Positions 1,345 through 54,430 of a stretch of 61,820 nucleotides of DNA are shown here, piece after piece; the stretch's first letter is position 1; each line of letters begins with the position of its first letter. Under the pieces are notes generated by a model, which saw only the letters and a program-made list of their open reading frames with translations, was not told where the DNA came from and searched no databases. This DNA comes from Octopus bimaculoides (taxonomy: Eukaryota): assembly GCF_001194135.2 (NCBI RefSeq), contig NC_068986.1:7806409-7868228 (forward strand), written 5' to 3'. A program made the translations under genes and the position numbers.

Positions 1345-2285
1345 AATAAGGTAACACCCCTTGTTATTCGAGCACCTTCCAGAGTATTCGAGCGGTTCCA
1401 AGCAGTGTTGTTTTCTCCAAGTGCGCCTCCCTTATTGCAGCCGCTATTTGTTCCATGTACTTCTCAAGATTCTTACTCATGTTCCCAAGCCTCCGACAAT
1501 TATTGGTACTACTGCCACCTGTTTCAGCGACCGCAACTGCTTAACTTCCTAAGCTAACCTGCTATATCTATCGACTTTTCTTTCTTCCTTATTGCAAACC
1601 TTGTTGTCAGCTGGGCATGCTATATCTATGATCTAGCGTCGTTTACTTTCTTTCTCAATTAACACTATATATCGTTTCTTATTCTCTATCTTATGGCTGC
1701 ACTGAATCATAAAGTCCTATTTTCGATTATGCCTTCGGGTTTGTGGTCGCACCACTTTTTGCTCTGCCAAGTCCGTACTTGTTGCAAAATTGTCCAATGG
1801 ACAATCCTTGCTATATTGTCATGACGTCTCTTATATTCTTTCTGGGCTAGTGGCATACATTGACTAGTAATATGCCATACGGTTTCACCATTTTGTCCAC
1901 AGATTCTGCACTTATCACTTTCTGATGTGTTATCTATTCTGTATATGATGTAATGGATTCTTAGTGCTTGCTCTTGGGCAGCACAGATTAGAGGCTTTGT
2001 TTCTGGTTTTAAATCACTTTTCGTCATCCATAGCCACCTTTTTTCACTGTCTGTCTTATCTTGAACATGCCTATGAAATTTTCCATACATTCTTTTCTTT
2101 ATCCACCTATTTTCAGTTTCATTCATTCTCAAGTACTTGTAAAATGCTTTATCTTTGCAATCTTCCATCCCACACAAACCTAATCCTCTTACGTCGAATA
2201 TTAGCGGTTCTGTGGCATTTTCACATACTATGTTGTTTTCTTCTGCTTTAATGTTGTGTTTGCATCCAATTAGTCTTCTTTCCCC
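1345..2285 (-). mobile_element. R4/Dong-like RLE non-LTR retrotransposon, 3' fragment (pseudogenised)
   Basis: ORF 1707-2177: LKPETKPLICAAQEQAL...KCRICGQNGETVWHITSQC..LAQKEYKRRHD (CCHC region). RLE remnant IIDIACPAD..KEERK..VPIIVGGLG downstream. Runs into the N-gap. Confidence 0.9.
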
Positions 2286-4984: not shown

Positions 4985-6047
4985 GTTTTCATCACAGTTT
5001 TTGTTGAAGCTCCTGGAGTCTTGCATGCATAGCGGGTTTACTACCTGCAGTCTAAGGTAACATGCTGTTAGTTCTTTTCAGCTATCTAATATTTTCCAGA
5101 TTATCCTGGCCGTGCCTAGGAGGCAAAACATGTCTTCACCTTCTTCATTTTCCGTAGCCGAGCCATTTCGTACTTCAGAGGGTTGTATCTATCTATATAT
5201 GTTCGCCTTCCTTCTTGACTATTCGTGGGTGAAAGGAGTATGCAACATCGACTATATAACATATGTGGTGCACCCTAGCCACAATCTCTAGGTCCAGTAT
5301 GTTATGCTATACTACCTGATTTGTTTGGATTGGGAAATCCTAGAGGATTTTGCTAGTCTCCGACTCTGCCACTCATTGCAGTTTGTGTTCATACCACGTC
5401 TTGCCTCTCTCTAGACCCCACTTTTCGCATAGTTTCCAGTGTAGCACTTTCCCTACCTGGTCGTGTCGCCACAACTTGTAGTAGCTTTGGGTAAGTCTAG
5501 GGCATTTGTTTATGATATGGGCAATGGTTTCATCCACTCTGTTACAGATGCGGCACAGCGGAGACACGTGCTCATTTCTAAGATTGACCCTCCATTTGGT
5601 GGTCAGAGCTCGGTCCTGCGCTGCCAGTATTATTTTCTCGGTCTCTCTTTTCAGGATTCCTTTCACCAGCCATTCCCACCTATTTTTCCATCACCTTCTG
5701 TTGTGTCTATATAGAATTGATTGTGTAGTCCCTTCTTGAGTACTGCTTCTTCCTGTCCTTTTTGTAATTCTTCCTTTGTTTTCCCATTTTTTTATTTCTA
5801 CCCAATTCTCCCGCTTTTCTGTCAGTAACAATATTTCCTTACTTTGTGTTAGGTATCTCATTAGGCTCTCGAGTTCGATATGCACGCAGTCTTCCACACT
5901 TATCAGTCCCCTTCCTCCATTTGCTCTTCTCATGTATTGGCGATCAGAGCTTACGCGTGGATGATGGGCTGATGCATCGTTAGGAGCTTTCCTGACTTCC
6001 TGTCCACCTGTATCTCTTCCTCTGTCCACTTCAGGATTCCAGCGTCA
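4985..6047 (-). mobile_element. R4/Dong-like RLE LINE, 5'-truncated
   Basis: ORFs 5691-6029 (HHPRVSSDRQYMRRANGGRGL) and 5373-5666 (LKRETEKIILAAQDRAL..CRICNRVDETIAHIINKC..YYKLWRHDQV). Confidence 0.9.
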
Positions 6048-6109: not shown

Positions 6110-6318
6110 GCGGCGAGCTGGCAGAATGTTTAGCATGCCACACGAAATGCTTAGCGGTATTTTGCCTGCCGCTACGTGCTGAGTTCAAATTCCGCCGAGG
6201 TCGGCTATGCCTTTCATTCTTTCGGGGTCGATAAATTAAGTACCAGTGAAACACTGGAGTCAATGTAATCGACTAGCCCCCTCCCCAAATTTGCAGGCCT
6301 TGTGCCTATAGTAGAAGG
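6110..6318 (+). mobile_element. tRNA-derived SINE type A, near full length
   Basis: Head GCGGCGAGCTGGCAGAA, B-box GAGTTCAAATTCC, (ATT)n tail. Confidence 0.92.
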
Positions 6319-6539
<221 letters not shown>

Positions 6540-6540
<1 letters not shown>

Positions 6541-7090
6541 TGTCTTACTTCGCAGAACGTTTGGTCTTGTTTGTTCTGGTAGATTCTGTGAGAGCGGACA
6601 GCAGCTTGCTGCCAGAGGTCTCACAGTATCTCTTTGCGCACATTATAAGCTTTGATACTTGGTTGTTAATTATCGTGGGAGACATTCAGCATCCAAGTAT
6701 CAATCTCAAAATCTTAACTGTTCCCAGAAGATTAGTCTCCTGGGCTCGTTCTGCTCTTATGTCAATTCTGATTACTTTGACATATTTCTCGAACTTGTTG
6801 TTAGAACTTCCAGGGCCCCTACAACTACTGGAATGACAAAAACTCTCCTCAATGTCCACATTCGTTTAGTAGTTCTCTACATTTGAACCATTCCTACTTT
6901 TTTGTCACGCATGCGTGCATCCCCAAGTATTGCAATATCTATGATCTTGGTTTATTTTTACTTTTATCTACTACAACAATATCTGGTCTCCGAGCCTCGA
7001 TCAAGGAGTTACATTAGATTGTAAAATCCCACAGTATCTTATGTTCCTTGTTATCGGTGATTCCTTCTGGTTCATGTTCGTAACATTTCT
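6540..7090 (-). mobile_element. R4/Dong-like LINE 3' end (RLE domain remnant)
   Basis: Minus strand reads YEHEPEGITDNKEHKILWDF...RRPDIVVVDK..KIIDIAILGD. Confidence 0.85.
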
Positions 7091-16350: not shown

Positions 16351-16460
16351 AAAACGGATATCAGCTTCAGGATCGTTTTGTATTCTTCGAGTAACATCAG
16401 CATCTGTATGTCTATGTAGACCCAACTTGTCCATACAAGTAGCTATGTTATTCATGTTAT

Positions 16461-17230
16461 CCTATTTTTGGGACTGCCATGTTGGCTTGGCGATAACTAT
16501 TAATTTCCAGTACCGCTGTCGTAGTCTCCTTTAGAGAGACTTAGAAATATTAATAACTCTATTTCTGAAAACCAGTGGATAGATTCCACTGAAATTAGAT
16601 AAATAACTTTCGAACAGATAGTCAGCAGCGCCGCCTGGCTAGGGCTTGGCTGCTCTGCATTGACAAGGGGCAACACCCTGAAACTAGTCTGCAGATGCCA
16701 AACCAGCAGGGGGACACTGCTGACCTCCCCTGTTCGGAGGTTATAAAGGACACAGGTTTCGTGTGTCACATAGCTAGCTAGAGGCGATGGCTTCTTGGAG
16801 CTAATTCAGGGCAGCTTTCGTCCTATTTTTGGGACTGCCATGTTGGCNNNNNNNNNNNNNNNNNNNNNNNNNNNNNNNNNNNNNNNNNNNNNNNNNNNNN
16901 NNNNNNNNNNNNNNNNNNNNNNNNNNNNNNNNNNNNNNNNNNNNNNNNNNNNNNNNNNNNNNNNNNNNNNNNNNNNNNNNNNNNNNNNNNNNNNNNNNNN
17001 NNNNNNNNNNNNNNNNNNNNNNNNNNNNNNNNNNNNNNNNNNNNNNNNNNNNNNNNNNNNNNNNNNNNNNNNNNNNNNNNNNNNNNNNNNNNNNNNNNNN
17101 NNNNNNNNNNNNNNNNNNNNNNNNNNNNATCCTATTTTTGGGACTGCCATGTTGGCTTGGCGATAACTATTAATTTCCAGTACCGCTGTCGTAGTCTCCT
17201 TTAGAGAGACTTAGAAATATTAATAACTCT
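16461..17230 (+). repeat. Head-to-tail ~361-bp repeat carrying a hammerhead (retrozyme/pLTR-like), interrupted by an N-gap
   Basis: CCTATTTTTGGGACTGCCATGTTGGC starts at 16461, 16822 and 17131. The third copy matches the first 100 bp, then ends in (TA)n. Confidence 0.7.
16634..16710 (+). ncRNA. Type I hammerhead ribozyme with U3-A8 covariant core
   Basis: TCTGCA-TTGACAA-GGGG caaca CCCT-GAAA-CTAGTC/TGCAGA. Stem I extends past an internal loop (TTGGC/GCCAA). Predicted cleavage after C16689. Confidence 0.8.
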
Positions 17231-18092
17231 ATATATATATATATATATATAGCTGAGGTCAGCAAATATAGATATCAGGCTAGCAAATCCCCAAAACGAA
17301 ATAGCAATGAACATTTTTTTTGCATTAGGGAGGAAAACTTCTTCCTTTGTTTGCATGACACCCCCTACCCAGTGTGCCACTCGTCCAACCGGGATAAACT
17401 TTGAACATCGATGTTCTGTACATTATACATTATATGAGCATCATGCATGACATATACTCTCATGAACTCATGCTGTACTCTTTTACTACACAGATATACG
17501 CGCATCGCATAGTCTCAAAACATCACATGATGTACAGAAAGAAAGACATGTCATCTTAACGAGCAACTTAATGAACCAAGTATGAAGTAAAAAATTTGTG
17601 AAATCCCATAATTAGGCACATTTACTCGAGCATGAACAAAATACGGATATGCATTTATATGCACATATGTGTATATTTCTATGTATGGGTGTGTGTGTGT
17701 ATATATATATATATTCTTTATGTGTGCGTATGTGCACATTTGTCTTTATATGTTTATACATTGATAATATGGACTAATACATTCGCTATTGCGTAAGATG
17801 ATGAAATCCAGGGCTAATGAAAGGGAAACAAAAATAAAGATATCCTTATAATTTACCTCTCTTTACATGTATATTTATTCATTTATTTCCAAATCTCCTA
17901 TAGTCTCGTGTAACTTCATGTATTTTGATCCAAAATAGATACGAGTTGTAACGTTTCATGCGGTACACTTGAACAATTGTAAAGAACCTCTATACATGAA
18001 ACCATTGGTAGCCTTGATAATTCACAATGTATGTATGTATGTATGTATGTATGTATGTATGAATGTGTATATATACATACACACAAACATAT

Positions 18093-18340
18093 AGAGGTTG
18101 GTCTTCAAGCGACAAGTGACCATTCCTAAGGTGTGAAAGCAACTCGTAAACTTGTGTTTTGCACATGGCAGCGTCCGTGTAAGCTGTTTGAAGTATGACA
18201 ACTGTTTCGGCCGCCGCATTCCCCAGCTGAAAAAAGAATTTCACGGATGCACAATGTTCCTTCATTTCAACCATCGCAAAAATCGACGAACAGGGGAAAA
18301 GCATTACAAAACAAAACTGCGCCACGTCGCAGTGCGACAT
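18093..18340 (-). mobile_element. Mariner transposase N-terminal HTH remnant
   Basis: MVEMKEHCASVKFFFQLGNAAAETVVILQTAYTDAAMCKTQVYELLSHLRNGHLSLEDQP, truncated by a microsatellite. Confidence 0.88.
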
Positions 18341-18564
18341 TACACGACGACGCTGGTTGGCAGACTGATGCCTGAGGGTTGCATCAAGTAGCTTCTAGCG
18401 GCGGAAGCCTCAGCTAAAACGGCTTTGTCCCACATAAAATGTTAGGGATAAGAGTATCCCTTCGAGTAAATATATATTGAATTGAAAAACTAAGAAAAAA
18501 AAATGCTTCGAGCACTTTATCATAGTAAACAGAGAGAAAATATAGCATGAAATATAGCATTTAA

Positions 18565-19540: not shown

Positions 19541-19659
19541 ACATTCATTAGATTTTTAGATGCACTAGTGAATTTATTTTTCTATTGTAAAGGATTATCC
19601 TTGTTTGAACTTGAACTCTTTCAGATTAAAACGATCCCTCTGTCAGATTAAAAGAATAT

Positions 19660-19951
19660 ATATATATATTGTGCGCATTTAAACTTACACTCACTTCCCA
19701 TTATGATGTTGGAGTTTAGCCGCAATTTCTCCAGTTACATGAGACGGTCTTTATACTTCAAGAATATAAATATTCCTCTTTGTATTTGTTTTGCCATGTC
19801 ATTTATGTAATCTAGAAACAAGCTTCTTAGAATTGTAGGTTTATAGCTGGAGGCGGTTTACTTATCTTCTGTTCAACTACATGTTAGAATTTCATGTGCA
19901 AGCTGTNNNNNNNNNNNNNNNNNNNNNNNNNNNNNNNNNNNNNNNNNNNNN

Positions 19952-20046: not shown

Positions 20047-20090
<44 letters not shown>

Positions 20091-20327
20091 TGTGCGCATT
20101 TAAACTTACACTCACTTCCCATTATGATGTTGGAGTTTAGCCGCAATTTCTCCAGTTACATGAGACGGTCTTTATACTTCAAGAATATAAATATTCCTCT
20201 TTGTATTTGTTTTGCCATGTCATTTATGTAATCTAGAAACAAGCTTCTTAGAATTGTAGGTTTATAGCTGGAGGCGGTTTACTTATCTTCTGTTCAACTA
20301 CATGTTAGAATTTCATGTGCAAGCTGT
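19660..20327. repeat. Identical ~247-bp duplication across an N-gap (19660-19906 = 20081-20327)
   Basis: Offset 421; no differences seen. Confidence 0.9.
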
Positions 20328-40909: not shown

Positions 40910-42225
40910 GCGTTTCTCTGCCTTAGGTGTCAGGAGGACATTCGGCAAGAAATGGAAACGGAATTGAAAGATGATTATGAAGTGCGACTTTAAGAAAGCT
41001 AAACAATGGAGACTAAATCAAGTGACGAATAAAGTCAATAATGTATTGAGACTCATTGAAACAAAGAACATCACGCAAACAGATAATGTTATCACGTCTG
41101 CTAATAGGATTGTGACGGAAAGGATGGAATTGAGAACTACTGAGAATAGAATAGAGACGGATAGAAGAGGAAATAAACAACCGTGGTGGAAAAGGAGAAT
41201 TTCTGAAGATATGAACTCCTTGAACAGTGTAGTGTCAATACTTCTCGGGAACAGAAATGGAGATTTTAAGAATGAATGGAAATTCGAAAAAGTTGGGAAG
41301 AAGTATGGTGTAGGTACAAGAGTCCTGAATATTGTAATTGAAGAACTGAAGCAACTCAAAAGAAGCAAAGCTAACCAGGTTTGAACAACGGATTAAGCAA
41401 TACCAGCAAAACGAATTGTTTAGAACCGAACCGATCCAAAACACATTTTACTCACAGATTAATGATGATCAAAACGTGAAAGATTAGTCCCTGATGCTGA
41501 TGAAAGTCAACCTTTTTAGGGATAAGATATGGATTAAGCAAGGACAATATAATACTACAGTTGAATGGTTCTGCAGCCTGAAACAAACAGCTTATCGCCA
41601 GCAAGAGACTATCCACGTCACAGAAGACAGTATCAGAAATATGAGTAAAAAGATAAGCAATTGGAAAGCAGCAGGACCTGATGGGGTACAGGGATTTGGG
41701 ATAAAAAAAGTTCAGTAGTTGCCATAAATTGACCGCAGAACAATTTAATGCATTGATCAATGGAGACGAAATCCCGGGTTGATTGTCAAAAGGACGAACG
41801 GTATTGTGCCTGAAGGATACAACAAAGGGAAATGCTGCTGACAATTACAGACCAATTTCTTGCCACCCGTTAATGTGGAAGTTATTTTCAGGAGGAATTT
41901 CAGAAGAACTGTATAAATTCCTGGATGAGGACGATATATTACCGCCGGAGATTCAGAGGTACCAAAGATCAATTATTGATGGACAAAACGGCAATACAAG
42001 ATTGTAAACGGAGAACAAATCTGGGAATGGCCTGGATTGACTATCGTAAAGCTTATTATATGATACAACATTCGTGGATCATCGAGTGTTTAGATATGGT
42101 TGGAATTGTGAGCAATGTAAGGTGTTTCCCGAAGAGAAGTATGGTGGGATGGAAAACTGAACTGACAGCATACGGAAAAGCTTGGGCAGCCTGGGTATCA
42201 GAAGAGGGATTTTCCAGGGTGACAG
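40910..42225 (+). mobile_element. R4/Dong-like LINE N-terminal half through RT, 3'-truncated
   Basis: [62 protein letters not shown]; preceded by (AAT)n at ~40865-40908. Confidence 0.92.
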
Positions 42226-42319
42226 ACTGCGTATAATGCTACTACTGCATAACACACGGTAAATCTGACGGTGGACGATCTTTATACTGTACTCTACTAC
42301 GTTCTTAACATAATATACC

Positions 42320-42365
<46 letters not shown>

Positions 42366-42933
42366 TAGACTTTCTTTGTTGCTATATTATTACCTGTTAA
42401 AATGTTCACGGATACATTATTCAATAAACACAATGACTCTGAACTCCTAGAAAGGGGGAAGGCTAACCTACATATATGTTATTCATTGTTGGCTGTCAGT
42501 CCGACATATTGATAAATAAATTATAGTTGCGTTAACCTTTCGTTGTTGTTGTTTTTCAATGCTGAATTGTACTGCAGAATATATCAATAAATGTTTTGTC
42601 AGGGACAAAATTAGGCAGACGATATCTAAAATAAATACAAGTGTTTCTGTGACAGAAGAGCAGATAACCACTCCAAAATGCTTGCATCTTACAGTCTGGG
42701 TAGATGGCACTGCAAGCTGGTTTTAGGTGTATCTACACCATTTGTCTACAGCGAGATATTTCCCCCATGACAAAAGAGTGAATGGCTTTCTTACTGGTTC
42801 GCCAAGTATATTTGAACTGGTAATAACATTATATTTTTAATCTCATCACTGATTGGCGCTGCCAATCCGTAATATGTCTAATAATTTCCCCCAAAATTAT
42901 ACATTGACAAACATATACACATTGTATATACAA

Positions 42934-42972
42934 TAGGCGCAGGTGTAGCTGTGTGGTAACAAGCTTGCTTCC
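42934..42972 (+). mobile_element. Orphan 5' head of CORE-type SINE
   Basis: GGCGCAGGTGTAGCTGTGTGGTAACAAGCTTGCTTCC matches the head of the 46300-46710 element. Confidence 0.65.
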
Positions 42973-43080
42973 GCGCATGCGTCGGTCTATTCGCTGTGTT
43001 GATTTTTTTAACAAGACGGACAGAATGTTTTGAGCTGCTTGGCAGTAGTTTGTCGGTGAGTGGTGTACCAGTGGAAAGGA

Positions 43081-44074
43081 ATGTATTCAGACCTTAGTGA
43101 GTGTGAGCTGTCCTCATCGGAAGAGGAGCTCGTCAAGGCGGTAAATTGAATGGATGAGCATTTGAAAAGAATAAAGAGTTTTGCTGAGGCTGCAGAGACG
43201 AAGAAAAAAGGAAGTGGACCTAACCGGACTGAAGGAGCTGTGTAAGATGACACAGAAGATGGGTGGTGATGTAAAGATATTACCCACGGAAAGGGTTATG
43301 GAAAAAAAGACCATCACCTACAAGGTGTATGCAGTGGAGAAAAGGAAGGTGGAGCGGATCGAGATGGAAAAAGTAGAAAAAGCTCTGAAGAGGCTTTCGA
43401 AGGAAGTGACGTATATAGCAAAAAGAAATGGACATGGGACGGTGGCTGTCCAGTTTAGGACAGCGGAGGAGGCAAAGAGGCTGGCGAGTACAACTGTTAA
43501 AACGGAGGAACTAGTACTTCTACCCACGTTACCTAGGAAGAAAGACTTATAAGGTGAGGGTAGAAGGAATTCCACCCGATATAGAAGTGGCTTGGGTAGC
43601 GGCAGCCGTCCTCGTTGGAAGTGAGGAGGCAGTGGCTGTCTTCTAAGCCACAGAGACGTAGGAAGTAGGATTTAAAGGGAAAAAATAGGAAATTACCATA
43701 CAAGCGGCAGCGAAACAGCTAGAAAATTTGGCGGAGACAGTGACGTTGGGAGAAATAGTATTGAAAGTATGGGTAGAGGGCAGAGCACCACGTTGTTTTA
43801 AATGTGGCCAAAAGGGCCACATTAGAGCATACTGCCCTCTACAAAGGACAATGGCTGAGGATGCAGTTGTGAAGACGGAGGAGAAGAGAGAGGAAGAAAA
43901 GACAGACGGAGGAAAGGAGAAAAAGGAGGAAGAATGGAAAGCTACAGAGAGCAGAAGGCGAAAGCGGGGAAAAAAAAGAAAAGACACTGAGTATGAGGTT
44001 GTGCCCCAGTCCAACTCCATCCCACCCAAGACCACTCAGACCTACCCTCCCTATACATGCACCAAACCCACCCA
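43081..44074 (+). pseudogene. L1/Tx1-type ORF1 (gag-like, CCHC zinc knuckle), frameshifted
   Basis: VRVEGIPPDI..WV and EGRAPRCFKCGQKGHIRAYC (knuckle 43794-43835), followed by a Lys/Glu-rich tail. Clade assignment is inferred. Confidence 0.7.
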
Positions 44075-51095: not shown

Positions 51096-52629
51096 AAAAA
51101 TTATAGCGGAAGAGGTAAATAGATAGATAGACAAGCAAATATATAGTTAGGGAAAGAGAGAGAGAGAAATAATTGAAAATAGTTATAATAATTAAACCCC
51201 ACTCTCAACAGCATACAGAAGTGGCTCGGTGCTTATTGTTCGATACTTTATGCTGCCAACGACACACTCAACAGCTTCATATCTACACAGACTAAAACTC
51301 CAGGCTAAACTTGTTCGGTTATTAGTCGATGTCATCACCGAAATATCGAATTATAAGTTTAAAATGCAAATACTTATTCTCATGTTTCATTTTCTTTTCA
51401 TTGTTTATATCTGCTTTGCATTGCAGTGCATTTCTCACTCACTTTAATTAAAACATTGCTTTTAACTACTTTTTATAGTTATTGAACGGTACTCTTCTTC
51501 CTCAGGGGTGTAATTTACTGTATATGTCTCATCAAAACGTTTATTCACAGAGGTTAAATACATAACTTAATTCGTTTACTGTTATCTACAGAGATTTAAT
51601 CATTTTCGAATACAATTAATCATCCTTTCTAATTAGATTTTGTGTTATCCCGAATCGCCAAACTATCCCTCATAAGTAATAGCTTCTGTTGGGTATGAAC
51701 AGTTGTTTTTTATCGTCGGTAAGGTGCACTATTTTAGTCAATTTAATTTCTAAAGGTAGATGCCCAAATGATAAAAAAACTTAACGTTACATTCAGTGCA
51801 GGATTGTAAAGGATTATAAAGCTGTCGAATGCGTCGGGTTACTAATCAGAGATTTATTCCAATGACGGAAATATGTTCACTGCGATAGATTGTTGTGGTA
51901 CCAAGTAGGTAATTTGTTTGCCAAACTCTGATTATAATGGAATCCATAGATAACTGGTTCTTCTATTGACTGTGACAATTATCAAAATATATAAAAATGT
52001 AAATCTACCAGAAGACGCTAAAGTGCAATCAACACTCTTTCTATAGAATTATCTATTCAATAATTCAATACGACAAAACTATTGCTAAACCTAAGCAAAT
52101 ACAAAATGTTGTATATCTACAGATTGCATACAAATAACCGATATCTGGCTCTACTGGATATTGGCTGCTTGTATAGAAGAGAAATATACGAACAAACTAG
52201 ACCAAAATTTCGGCATTCTCCCTTCCATACCAACATAATTATTGTTAGAATTATACATACATACATACATACATACATACATGCATGCATGCATACATAC
52301 ATTCTTACATACATACGTACATGCATACATATATACATATATATGTGTGTGTGTGTGTGTGTGTGTATACAGATACATACATACGTACATACATACATAT
52401 ATACATATATATGTGTGTGCATATATATGAACGTCTGTCGATAAATGTGTATGTATTTCTATGGTATTCTTCATTGTCAAAGGCATATCACTAAAAGAAG
52501 AACCAACCACACATTTGATATATTCTAATAATTCTTTGCATTATGAAGATATTAGTAAAGATTTAACTGGTCATTTTTTTTTCCCTAATAATTGAACCAA
52601 TACTTTACCTGGTAAAAATTGTTGAAATT

Positions 52630-52727
52630 GCACACGAGGCCAGTAATTTTAGGATGAGTACATTAGTCGGATACATCGATCCCAGTGCATCGATCCCAGT
52701 GCTAACGATTCTACCAGCTCGCCGCTT
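52630..52727 (-). mobile_element. Internally deleted SINE type A
   Basis: Head GCGGCGAGCTGGTAGAATCGTTAGC joined directly to the 3' part, with a tandem CATCGATCCCAGTG duplication at the junction. Confidence 0.7.
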
Positions 52728-52736
52728 TATTATTAT

Positions 52737-54430
<1,694 letters not shown>

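What the first reader, a model, noticed from the sequence alone, without database searches (positions are those of the whole stretch)
16461..17230. Candidate retrozyme: ~361-bp head-to-tail unit with an intact U3-A8 variant type I hammerhead
Seen: stem I TCTGCA/TGCAGA, core TTGACAA, stem II GGGG/CCCT, GAAA, palindrome ACTAGT, GUC at 16687-16689. Stem I continues past an internal loop (TTGGC/GCCAA, then GG/CC and CCTG-GCT/AGC-AGG). The unit has further hairpins (GTCTC/GAGAC, CAGTGG/CCACTG, GACAC/GTGTC), no ORF, and restarts at 16822 and 17131. Known: C3-G8 is a Watson-Crick pair and U3-A8 is a compensated natural variant; a stem I bulge can dock with loop II; metazoan non-LTR retrozymes are small tandem HHR repeats that yield circular RNAs. 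Inference: tandem transcripts self-cleave into ~361-nt monomers or circles, possibly mobilised by the PLEs abundant here. A second HHR is predicted inside the gap. Caveat: the third copy may be an assembly or haplotype duplicate.
Basis: partly seen in the sequence, partly recalled or inferred. Interest (0 to 1): 0.85.

Follow-up and report, generated by a model that had tools for sequence, protein, structure and literature searches.

The report
Hammerhead-bearing 361-nt repeat, copy number unresolved
A 361-base non-coding unit carries one well-formed animal-type hammerhead ribozyme motif and restarts head-to-tail once before an assembly gap, so it is probably an ordinary member of the known retrozyme or Penelope-derived repeat class, but this window cannot show that it is a real tandem array or that it cleaves.

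Summary
The unit is 16460-16820 (361 nt). The type I hammerhead is at 16654-16695 (+). It has helix I of 6 bp, core UUGACAA (U3-A8), helix II of 4 bp with a G10.1·U11.1 wobble, GAAA, the palindrome ACUAGU, and C17 at 16689. This matches the published architecture of canonical metazoan type I hammerheads. It is the only hit in the window on either strand. Shuffles give 0.0005-0.04 hits per window depending on the descriptor. Rfam gives no hammerhead match even at E≤10, and no related sequence was found in any collection, so there is no covariation evidence.

The tandem claim is only partly supported. One unit-end to unit-start junction is read through (16820/16821). The left contig then stops exactly on the 27-mer that begins the unit. 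The post-gap copy (17129-17232) is 100% identical and starts with the upstream-flank base A, not the unit-end base G. The next gap (19907-19951) is also flanked by an exact 251-nt duplicate. Copy number is therefore 1.29 to ≥2.29, and the "second ribozyme in the gap" is unproven.

No reverse transcriptase or GIY-YIG gene lies within about 6 kb. The reverse-transcriptase remnants in the window look LINE-like, not Penelope-like.

Verdict: a plausible new member of a known kind, of modest interest.

The parts
16460..16820 (+). The one complete 361-nt repeat unit. It is non-coding, 46.8% GC and strongly self-paired.
   Evidence: The repeat family has a period of 361. blastn finds no other copy in the window. 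Linear fold z = -5.8 on the + strand and -6.8 on the - strand. Circular fold is -135.3 kcal/mol, z = -7.0, 64% paired.
16654..16695 (+). Type I hammerhead motif. Helix I 16654-16659/16690-16695. Core U3-A9 at 16660-16666 (UUGACAA). Helix II 16667-16670/16676-16679 with loop CAACA, where G10.1·U11.1 is a wobble. G12-A14 at 16680-16682. A15.1 to U16.1 is the palindrome ACUAGU at 16683-16688. C17 is at 16689, so predicted cleavage is at 16689/16690.
   Evidence: Read directly. It is the only descriptor hit in the window on both strands. Chance expectation is 0.0005-0.043 per window. There is no Rfam hit.
16603..16744 (+). Long imperfect hairpin (rod) with the hammerhead at its tip. Helix I continues past a 3-nt/1-nt internal loop (UGC/U) into UUGGC/GCCAA and further pairs, and is closed by a 15-bp stem (16603-16617/16730-16744).
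   Evidence: Minimum-energy folds. The 108-nt core region has z = -2.4.
16821..16847 (+). Restart of the unit (27 nt, 100% identical to 16460-16486). The left contig ends exactly here.
   Evidence: The junction 16820/16821 is read through within one contig.
16848..17128 (.). Assembly gap (281 N, estimated length). It would need to be 333 N to hold the rest of one unit, or -27 if the two contigs simply overlap.
17129..17232 (+). Partial copy, 104 nt, 100% identical to 16459-16562. It consists of the flank base A plus unit positions 1-103. It then leaves the unit and runs into (TA)11.
   Evidence: The first base A equals 16459 (flank), not 16820 (G).
17230..17251 (.). (TA)11 microsatellite directly abutting the end of the array.
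   Evidence: (TA)n is a reported preferred target of some PLE clades (PMC8557442). The link to this locus is inference only.

Best explanation
This is a genomic copy (1.3 to about 2.3 units) of a short non-autonomous, hammerhead-bearing repeat. It belongs to the class described as metazoan non-LTR retrozymes, which are related to the pseudo-LTRs of Penelope-like elements.

What is shown:
- A complete 361-nt non-coding unit carries one type I hammerhead of the canonical metazoan build: helix I 6 bp, helix II 4 bp, helix III one pair plus the palindromic loop CUAG.
- The core pair is switched from C3-G8 to U3-A8.
- There is one read-through head-to-tail junction.
- The predicted RNA is highly self-paired.

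What is inferred:
- A multimeric transcript would fold two neighbouring hammerheads into a double hammerhead, through the self-complementary ACUAGU (a 6-bp intermolecular helix III).
- It would cut after C17 (16689/16690) in each unit and release 361-nt monomers with 5'-OH and 2',3'-cyclic phosphate ends.
- A tRNA ligase (RtcB type) would circularise these monomers.
- A reverse transcriptase supplied in trans would copy them back as partial tandems.

At this locus that cycle needs a second hammerhead, which exists only if the gap really holds another unit. Otherwise this copy is a 1.29-unit insertion: a 103-nt partial copy followed by one full element, the layout typical of PLE-style integration. 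Such a copy could not excise itself.
For: - All invariant hammerhead positions are present, or changed in the compensated way, at 16654-16695.
- The architecture equals the published description of canonical metazoan type I hammerheads: helix I 6 bp, helix II 4 bp, helix III 1-2 bp with a 2-4-nt palindromic loop, acting as dimers (PMC4209133).
- U3-A8 is a known natural covariation that is active in vitro (PMC3088659; PMC4209133).
- A weakened base of helix II is tolerated in a working retrozyme hammerhead: axolotl Amex2 has a U·U mismatch there (PMC7229834).
- The candidate is the only hit in the window, and the reversed control has none. Shuffle expectation is 0.0005-0.043.
- The motif sits inside the only long-period repeat of the window.
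- Unit length, GC below 50%, lack of coding capacity and a rod-like or branched fold with z = -7 match the retrozyme descriptions.
- The layout of a partial copy plus a full copy next to (TA)n matches PLE-style insertions, which are also reported to break short-read assemblies (PMC8557442).
Against: - Rfam's hammerhead models do not match, at gathering score, at E≤10 in 1 kb, or at E≤10 in 71 nt.
- No second copy exists in the window.
- No relative was found in the metagenome, viral, prokaryote-genome or protein collections. There is therefore no covariation and no evidence that this is a multicopy family.
- Only one hammerhead is readable.
- The three copies of the shared segment are 100% identical, which a collapsed assembly graph would produce by construction.
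- G10.1·U11.1 deviates from the near-invariant G-C pair. It lies at a CpG of the consensus (CCCCG to CCCTG), so this copy may be a decayed one.
- No PLE reverse transcriptase or GIY-YIG is detectable in the window. The reverse-transcriptase remnants look LINE-type.
- Both strands fold equally well, so the fold does not select the hammerhead strand.
Confidence: 0.55

Rival explanations
1. Chance hammerhead look-alike inside a local duplication or an assembly artefact. A hairpin-rich 361-nt stretch was duplicated once, or two haplotype contigs were laid side by side across a gap. The motif at the hairpin tip has no catalytic role.
For: - A hit at 0.0005-0.04 per window is expected tens to hundreds of times in a gigabase genome.
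- Real DNA is richer in hairpins than shuffled DNA.
- Rfam is silent.
- There is no other copy and no relative.
- The post-gap copy starts with the flank base A. The neighbouring gap (19907-19951) is flanked by a 251-nt exact duplicate, so this assembly does duplicate sequence around gaps.
- The motif carries three deviations from the consensus.
Against: - The deviations at positions 3 and 8 are exactly the compensating pair.
- Helix lengths, the 3-nt/1-nt internal loop after 6 bp of helix I, and the palindromic helix III were not free parameters. They match a published architecture.
- The motif coincides with the only long-period repeat in 56.7 kb. That repeat covers about 1.4% of the readable bases, so the joint chance is of the order of 1e-5 to 1e-3.
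- The junction 16820/16821 lies inside a contig, so at least one head-to-tail join is real sequence.
Confidence: 0.3
2. Terminus (pseudo-LTR) of an autonomous Penelope-like element, or a fragment of one. The hammerhead would be the PLE's own ribozyme rather than part of a separate retrozyme.
For: - PLE pseudo-LTRs carry hammerheads, including U3-A8 variants.
- PLEs insert as partial tandems, prefer (TA)n in some clades, and disrupt short-read assemblies.
- Retrozyme consensus sequences are homologous to PLE pseudo-LTRs in Xenopus.
Against: - There is no RT, GIY-YIG or other Pfam domain in any stop-free segment of at least 70 aa between 10 and 23 kb.
- No GIY-YIG-like motif lies in an open, recognisable reading frame anywhere in the window: the motif search gave a single match, at 5180 (+), with stop codons inside it and in its context, and no YxDD match other than the LINE-like one at 52.9 kb.
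- The period is 361 nt, not about 3 kb.
- The motif has canonical dimensions (helix I 6 bp, helix II 4 bp). It does not have the PLE min-hammerhead build of helix II 6-8 bp with a 5' bulge and helix I 4-5 bp.
- No min-hammerhead occurs elsewhere in the window.
Confidence: 0.1

Closest known systems
Metazoan non-LTR retrozymes (Cervera & de la Peña 2020, PMC7229834), for example the Mytilus repeats of 350-390 bp
   Same: It is a short non-coding unit within the 170-400-nt range and has GC below 50%. It carries one type I hammerhead per unit, has a head-to-tail junction, and is predicted to form a highly self-paired circular RNA.
   Different: Only 1.07 contiguous units are seen here. Genome copy number and expression are unknown. 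The core is U3-A8 rather than C3-G8, with a G·U at 10.1/11.1. There is no sequence similarity to the mussel consensus text held in the paper's supplement.
Amphibian satellite 2 / axolotl HHR_Amex1 and HHR_Amex2 hammerheads (PMC7229834)
   Same: Helix III is a single pair capped by a palindromic tetraloop, so efficient cleavage is expected only as a double hammerhead. This is like Amex1. The base of helix II is weakened, like the U·U of Amex2. The unit is about 330-360 nt.
   Different: The host type differs: this is an AT-rich, microsatellite-rich genome whose taxon was not identified. The core pair is U3-A8. The loop 1 and loop 2 nucleotides are not the conserved amphibian ones, as far as can be judged without an alignment.
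Schistosoma mansoni PLE (Cercyon) minimal hammerheads with U3-A8 (PMC4209133)
   Same: It has the same compensated core variant and the same expected dependence on dimer formation.
   Different: Those motifs have no helix III, a long helix II (7-8 bp) with a 5' bulge and a short helix I. They sit in the pseudo-LTRs of a coding element. This one has canonical helix sizes and no coding partner nearby.
Cave-cricket pDo500 satellite hammerhead (PMC2837043, title and abstract only)
   Same: It is a hammerhead embedded in a tandem repeat of a few hundred bp in an invertebrate genome.
   Different: That family is a documented high-copy satellite. Copy number here is unknown, and the sequences were not compared.

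Membership tests
Hammerhead ribozyme, type I | Conserved core: C3 U4 G5 A6 N7 G8 A9, G12 A13 A14, A15.1-U16.1, H17 | tested here: met
   The sequence reads U3 U4 G5 A6 C7 A8 A9 / G12 A13 A14 / A15.1...U16.1 C17 at 16660-16689. Positions 3 and 8 are changed together to the documented compensated pair U-A.
Hammerhead ribozyme, type I | Three helices around the core, with helix I open | tested here: met
   Helix I is 6 bp and continues past an internal loop. Helix II is 4 bp (one G·U) with a 5-nt loop. Helix III is one pair plus the palindromic loop CUAG and is stable only as a dimer. This equals the published canonical metazoan build.
Hammerhead ribozyme, type I | Match to the curated covariance models (Rfam hammerhead families) | tested here: not met
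   There is no hammerhead hit at gathering score, at E≤10 in 1 kb, or at E≤10 in 71 nt. The cause is probably U3-A8, G·U and the minimal helix III, but this was not tested.
Hammerhead ribozyme, type I | Conservation and covariation across homologues | tested here: inconclusive
   No homologue was found in the window or in any collection. The collections hold little or no animal DNA.
Hammerhead ribozyme, type I | Site-specific self-cleavage | not testable with these tools
   This needs in vitro transcription of monomer and dimer constructs.
Non-LTR retrozyme | Head-to-tail tandem repeats of a unit of a few hundred bp | tested here: inconclusive
   One junction is read through (16820/16821). Only 27 nt of unit 2 come before the gap. 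The post-gap copy may be an assembly duplicate. The total is 1.29 to ≥2.29 units.
Non-LTR retrozyme | A type I hammerhead in each unit | tested here: inconclusive
   The motif is present in the only complete unit. A second one would lie in unread sequence.
Non-LTR retrozyme | Non-coding, no LTR/PBS/PPT, GC below 50%, highly self-paired monomer | tested here: met
   The unit's only ORF has no Pfam hit and no homologue. GC is 46.8%. The circular fold has z = -7.0.
Non-LTR retrozyme | Multicopy family in the genome, expressed as linear and circular RNA | not testable with these tools
   Only one 61.8-kb window is available. It holds no other copy, and there are no RNA data.
Non-LTR retrozyme | Co-occurrence with autonomous PLEs in the same genome | tested here: inconclusive
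   No PLE RT or GIY-YIG was detected in the window, and the reverse-transcriptase remnants look LINE-type. One window says little about the whole genome.
Penelope-like element pseudo-LTR | Flanks an RT plus GIY-YIG open reading frame | tested here: not met
   No domain was found in stop-free segments of at least 70 aa from 10 to 23 kb. The GIY-YIG motif search gave one match, at 5180 (+), broken by stop codons, and no PLE-type match elsewhere. Shorter or heavily decayed remnants are not excluded.
Penelope-like element pseudo-LTR | Minimal hammerhead build (long helix II with a 5' bulge, short helix I, no helix III) | tested here: not met
   The motif has helix I of 6 bp, helix II of 4 bp, no bulge, and a palindromic insert in helix III.

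The most novel reading that the evidence does not exclude
The scaffold records a presence/absence polymorphism of exactly one unit. One haplotype would be flank + 103 nt + (TA)n, represented by the right contig, which begins with the flank base A. The other would be flank + 361 nt + 103 nt + (TA)n. That would point to very recent gain or loss of a unit from a retrozyme family whose canonical-size hammerhead runs on a U3-A8 core with a G·U at 10.1/11.1. It would occur in a genome region where only LINE-type reverse transcriptases are visible.
Probability: 0.12. Interest if true: 0.5.

Novelty: new member of a known kind. Interest (0 to 1): 0.3.

Why it matters
If real, it adds one more species-specific retrozyme or PLE-derived hammerhead repeat. 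It would also be a natural example of a canonical-size metazoan hammerhead using the U3-A8 core pair. That is useful for hammerhead descriptors and covariance models, since Rfam misses it. It does not open a new question. Hammerhead-bearing short tandem repeats that give circular RNAs are already documented across animal phyla, and U3-A8 is a known covariation. The practical lesson concerns the assembly: this locus and the next gap show that the scaffold duplicates sequence around gaps, so copy numbers read from it are unreliable.

Tried and rejected
1. Rfam gave no hammerhead at gathering score on the whole window, at E≤10 on 1 kb, or at E≤10 on 71 nt. The weak hits (RT-8, mir-568, mir-297, FTX_1, Hsp83 UTR) fall on AT and CT microsatellites and were dismissed.
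2. Exact-pattern scans for the hammerhead found nothing in the metagenome, viral or prokaryote-genome collections.
3. I used the unit's spurious minus-strand ORF as a probe for other copies. It is not on record and has no homologues.
4. I tried to identify the host.
   - The DUF1676 hit of ORF 6214-6624 is an artefact of R/M/I homopolymer runs encoded by trinucleotide repeats.
   - A LINE ORF found only three relatives, at no more than 62% identity, in unnamed ENA metagenome assemblies.
   - The taxon was not determined.
5. A SINE or tRNA origin is not supported, because no tRNA-like gene lies in 15.5-18.5 kb.
6. A coding PLE terminus was rejected for lack of any RT or GIY-YIG nearby.
7. The supplement of PMC7229834 was searched for the motif. 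The only match is an unrelated ACTAGTC in the mussel consensus. No supplement text is held for PMC4209133.
8. I did not build my own covariance model from remembered hammerhead sequences. That would rest on recall and would not change the verdict.

Full report
**What is in the sequence**

The window is an AT-rich (about 30-40% GC) eukaryotic scaffold that is very rich in microsatellites and has 13 runs of N.

At 16460-16820 lies a 361-nt stretch. Its first 27 nt recur immediately after its end (16821-16847, 100%). The contig then stops at a 281-N gap. After the gap, 17129-17232 repeats 16459-16562 exactly (104 nt). It then leaves the unit and enters (TA)11 and unique sequence. blastn finds no other copy of the unit in the window. 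TRF finds no other long-period tandem repeat.

**The hammerhead motif**

The motif at 16654-16695 on the + strand reads as follows:
- Helix I: UCUGCA/UGCAGA (6 bp).
- Core: U3 U4 G5 A6 C7 A8 A9.
- Helix II: GGGG/CCCU (4 bp, with G10.1·U11.1 a wobble) and loop CAACA.
- G12 A13 A14.
- A15.1-CUAG-U16.1, which is the palindrome ACUAGU.
- C17 at 16689.

After 6 bp, helix I passes a 3-nt/1-nt internal loop and continues for about 40 more positions. It is closed by a 15-bp stem at 16603-16617/16730-16744. The hammerhead therefore sits at the tip of a 140-nt rod.

This is the build that Cervera and de la Peña describe for canonical metazoan type I hammerheads. Helix I is 6 bp and helix II is 4 bp. Helix III is 1-2 bp capped by a 2-4-nt palindromic loop. 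That helix III is too weak to work alone, and the ribozyme becomes active when two tandem copies form a double hammerhead (PMC4209133; PMC6155905).

U3-A8 is a documented natural covariation of the C3-G8 pair that is active in vitro (PMC3088659). It was found in about 1,300 Schistosoma PLE-type motifs.

A weakened base of helix II is tolerated in the axolotl Amex2 retrozyme hammerhead, which still cleaves well as a dimer (PMC7229834).

From the sequence alone, I note that U11.1 replaces the C of a consensus CpG (C11.1-G12). It could therefore be a private C-to-T decay of this copy. A8 likewise follows C7. This is inference only.

**Is it more than chance?**

- A generous descriptor accepted either core pair, any helix III and G·U pairs. 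It hits only this site in the window, on both strands. It gives 0.017-0.043 hits per dinucleotide-shuffled window.
- A descriptor taken from the literature architecture (palindromic helix III) gives 0.01 hits per shuffled window with helix I of at least 4 bp, and 0.0005 with at least 6 bp. It again hits only this site.
- A still looser descriptor finds nothing in the reversed window, which keeps hairpin content.

In a gigabase genome, such rates still allow tens to hundreds of accidental matches. The motif alone is therefore not proof.

The motif does coincide with the only long-period repeat of the window, with a 361-nt non-coding unit of 46.8% GC, and with a very stable predicted fold. The linear fold has z = -5.8. 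The circular monomer cut at C17 folds to -135.3 kcal/mol, z = -7.0, with 64% of bases paired. This coincidence makes an accident considerably less likely.

The minus strand folds equally well (z = -6.8), so the fold says nothing about which strand matters.

**Evidence against, and evidence missing**

- Rfam's hammerhead models do not match at any threshold tried.
- No relative could be found. The pattern scans of the metagenome, viral and prokaryote collections were empty.
- The unit's spurious 89/101-aa ORF has no counterpart among the predicted proteins.
- These collections hold little animal DNA. A LINE ORF from the window found only three relatives at no more than 62% identity, so the source organism is evidently not represented.
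- The negative results therefore say nothing about copy number in the source genome. The consequence is that no covariation test was possible.

**The gap**

The left contig ends exactly on the 27-mer that begins the unit. That is the point where the path "flank to unit" and the path "unit end to unit start" merge. This is what a short-read graph assembler does at an unresolved loop.

The right contig begins with A plus unit positions 1-103. That A equals the upstream flank base (16459), not the base that precedes the restart (16820, G).

Three layouts fit:
- (A) The gap hides the remaining 334 nt of unit 2, so there are at least 2.29 units and a second hammerhead. The gap would have to be 333 N, against the 281 written.
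- (B) The contigs overlap by 27 nt, so there are 1.29 units and one hammerhead.
- (C) The right contig is the other haplotype and lacks the unit-specific 258 nt, so the locus is polymorphic for one unit.

The single base A favours (C). The positive gap estimate favours (A). Neither is decisive.

The next gap (19907-19951) shows how little the scaffold can be trusted here. The 251 nt before it (19656-19906) recur at 100% identity after it (20077-20327).

The 100% identity of the three copies of the shared segment may simply reflect one collapsed graph edge written out more than once. What is certain is one read-through junction and one hammerhead.

**Surroundings**

- No Pfam domain occurs in any stop-free segment of at least 70 aa between 10 and 23 kb.
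- The GIY-YIG motif search gave one match in the window, at 5180 (+), with stop codons inside it and in its context, so it does not indicate a GIY-YIG gene.
- The reverse-transcriptase remnants carry zf-RVT or LINE-style motifs. They lie at 1707-2177(-), 5376-5690(-), about 41.5-42.2 kb(+) and 52.6-54.1 kb(+). The motifs include NWKAAGPDG, NYRPIS and FYIDDL.
- No PLE-type minimal hammerhead occurs elsewhere.
- The unit is therefore not the terminus of a recognisable coding PLE, and "PLEs abundant here" is not visible in this window.
- Read in the phase 16563 onwards, the array is a 103-nt 3' fragment followed by a full element ending next to (TA)11. PLE-type integrations are reported to give partial tandems of this kind, some clades prefer (TA)n, and such insertions break short-read assemblies (PMC8557442).
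- A 2026 preprint finds retrozyme consensus sequences homologous to PLE pseudo-LTRs, with family lengths of 51-972 bp and mostly seven units or fewer.

**Most likely mechanism**

I judge it most likely (about 0.55) that this is a copy of a non-autonomous hammerhead repeat of the retrozyme or PLE-derived kind.

Shown: the motif, the unit, one head-to-tail junction, and the fold.

Inferred from the family:
- Multimeric transcripts pair two ACUAGU segments into a 6-bp shared helix III.
- They cut after C17 in each unit and release 361-nt monomers.
- A tRNA ligase closes these into circles (PMC7229834).
- A reverse transcriptase supplied in trans copies them back into the genome.

At this locus that works only under layout (A). 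Under (B) or (C), the copy has a single dimer-dependent ribozyme and cannot excise itself.

Rivals:
- A chance motif in a local duplication or assembly artefact (about 0.3).
- A fragment of a coding PLE's pseudo-LTR (about 0.1).

**Comparison with what is known, and novelty**

It works like a metazoan non-LTR retrozyme. Its ribozyme is closest in build to the amphibian Amex1 and Amex2 type, and in core sequence to the U3-A8 PLE motifs of Schistosoma.

For membership, the core, the helix architecture, and the non-coding, low-GC, self-paired unit were tested and met. The tandem array is inconclusive. The Rfam model match is not met. Copy number, expression and cleavage cannot be tested here.

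If real, it is a new member of a known kind, and interest is modest (0.3).

Noticed in passing
window 19656-19906 and 20077-20327, around the gap 19907-19951: The 251 nt that end the contig before this gap recur at 100% identity 126 nt into the next contig, which then continues into unique sequence. This is either a false duplication from unmerged or haplotype contigs, or a real tandem duplication of about 420 bp separated by (GA)n/(AC)n repeats. It shows that gap sizes and copy numbers in this scaffold are unreliable.
   Followed up: partly
window 40968-43549 (+), 52567-54146 (+), 1707-2177 (-), 5376-5690 (-): These are decayed reverse-transcriptase remnants that look LINE-type: weak RVT_1 hits, zf-RVT hits, and the motifs NWKAAGPDG, NYRPIS and FYIDDL. 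No PLE-type RT or GIY-YIG endonuclease was detected in the window.
   Followed up: partly
window 6214-6624 (-): The ORF's Pfam hit to DUF1676, and to several membrane families, is an artefact. The ORF consists of runs of R, M and I encoded by adjacent trinucleotide microsatellites.
   Followed up: yes
whole window: Microsatellite density is extreme: 51 TRF rows, including (ATT)n, (AT)n, (TC)n, (ATAC)n and (ATGT)n. Most of the 13 N gaps are bordered by such repeats. This is typical of a short-read scaffold of a repeat-rich invertebrate-like genome. The taxon was not identified.
   Followed up: partly
window 17993-18394 (-): This 134-aa stop-free segment lies just downstream of the array. From memory, part of it (…VKFFFQLGNAAAETVVILQTAY…SLEDQP…) resembles the N-terminal helix-turn-helix of mariner-type transposases. 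Pfam gives no hit even at E≤1, so this is unverified.
   Followed up: partly
L001 3001-3543 and L002 3001-3543: Contigs of 0.74 and 2.18 Mb in two ENA 'metagenome' assemblies carry LINE-like ORFs 57-59% identical to the window's ORF at 53218-53625. This suggests that eukaryotic chromosomes are present in those assemblies.
   Followed up: no
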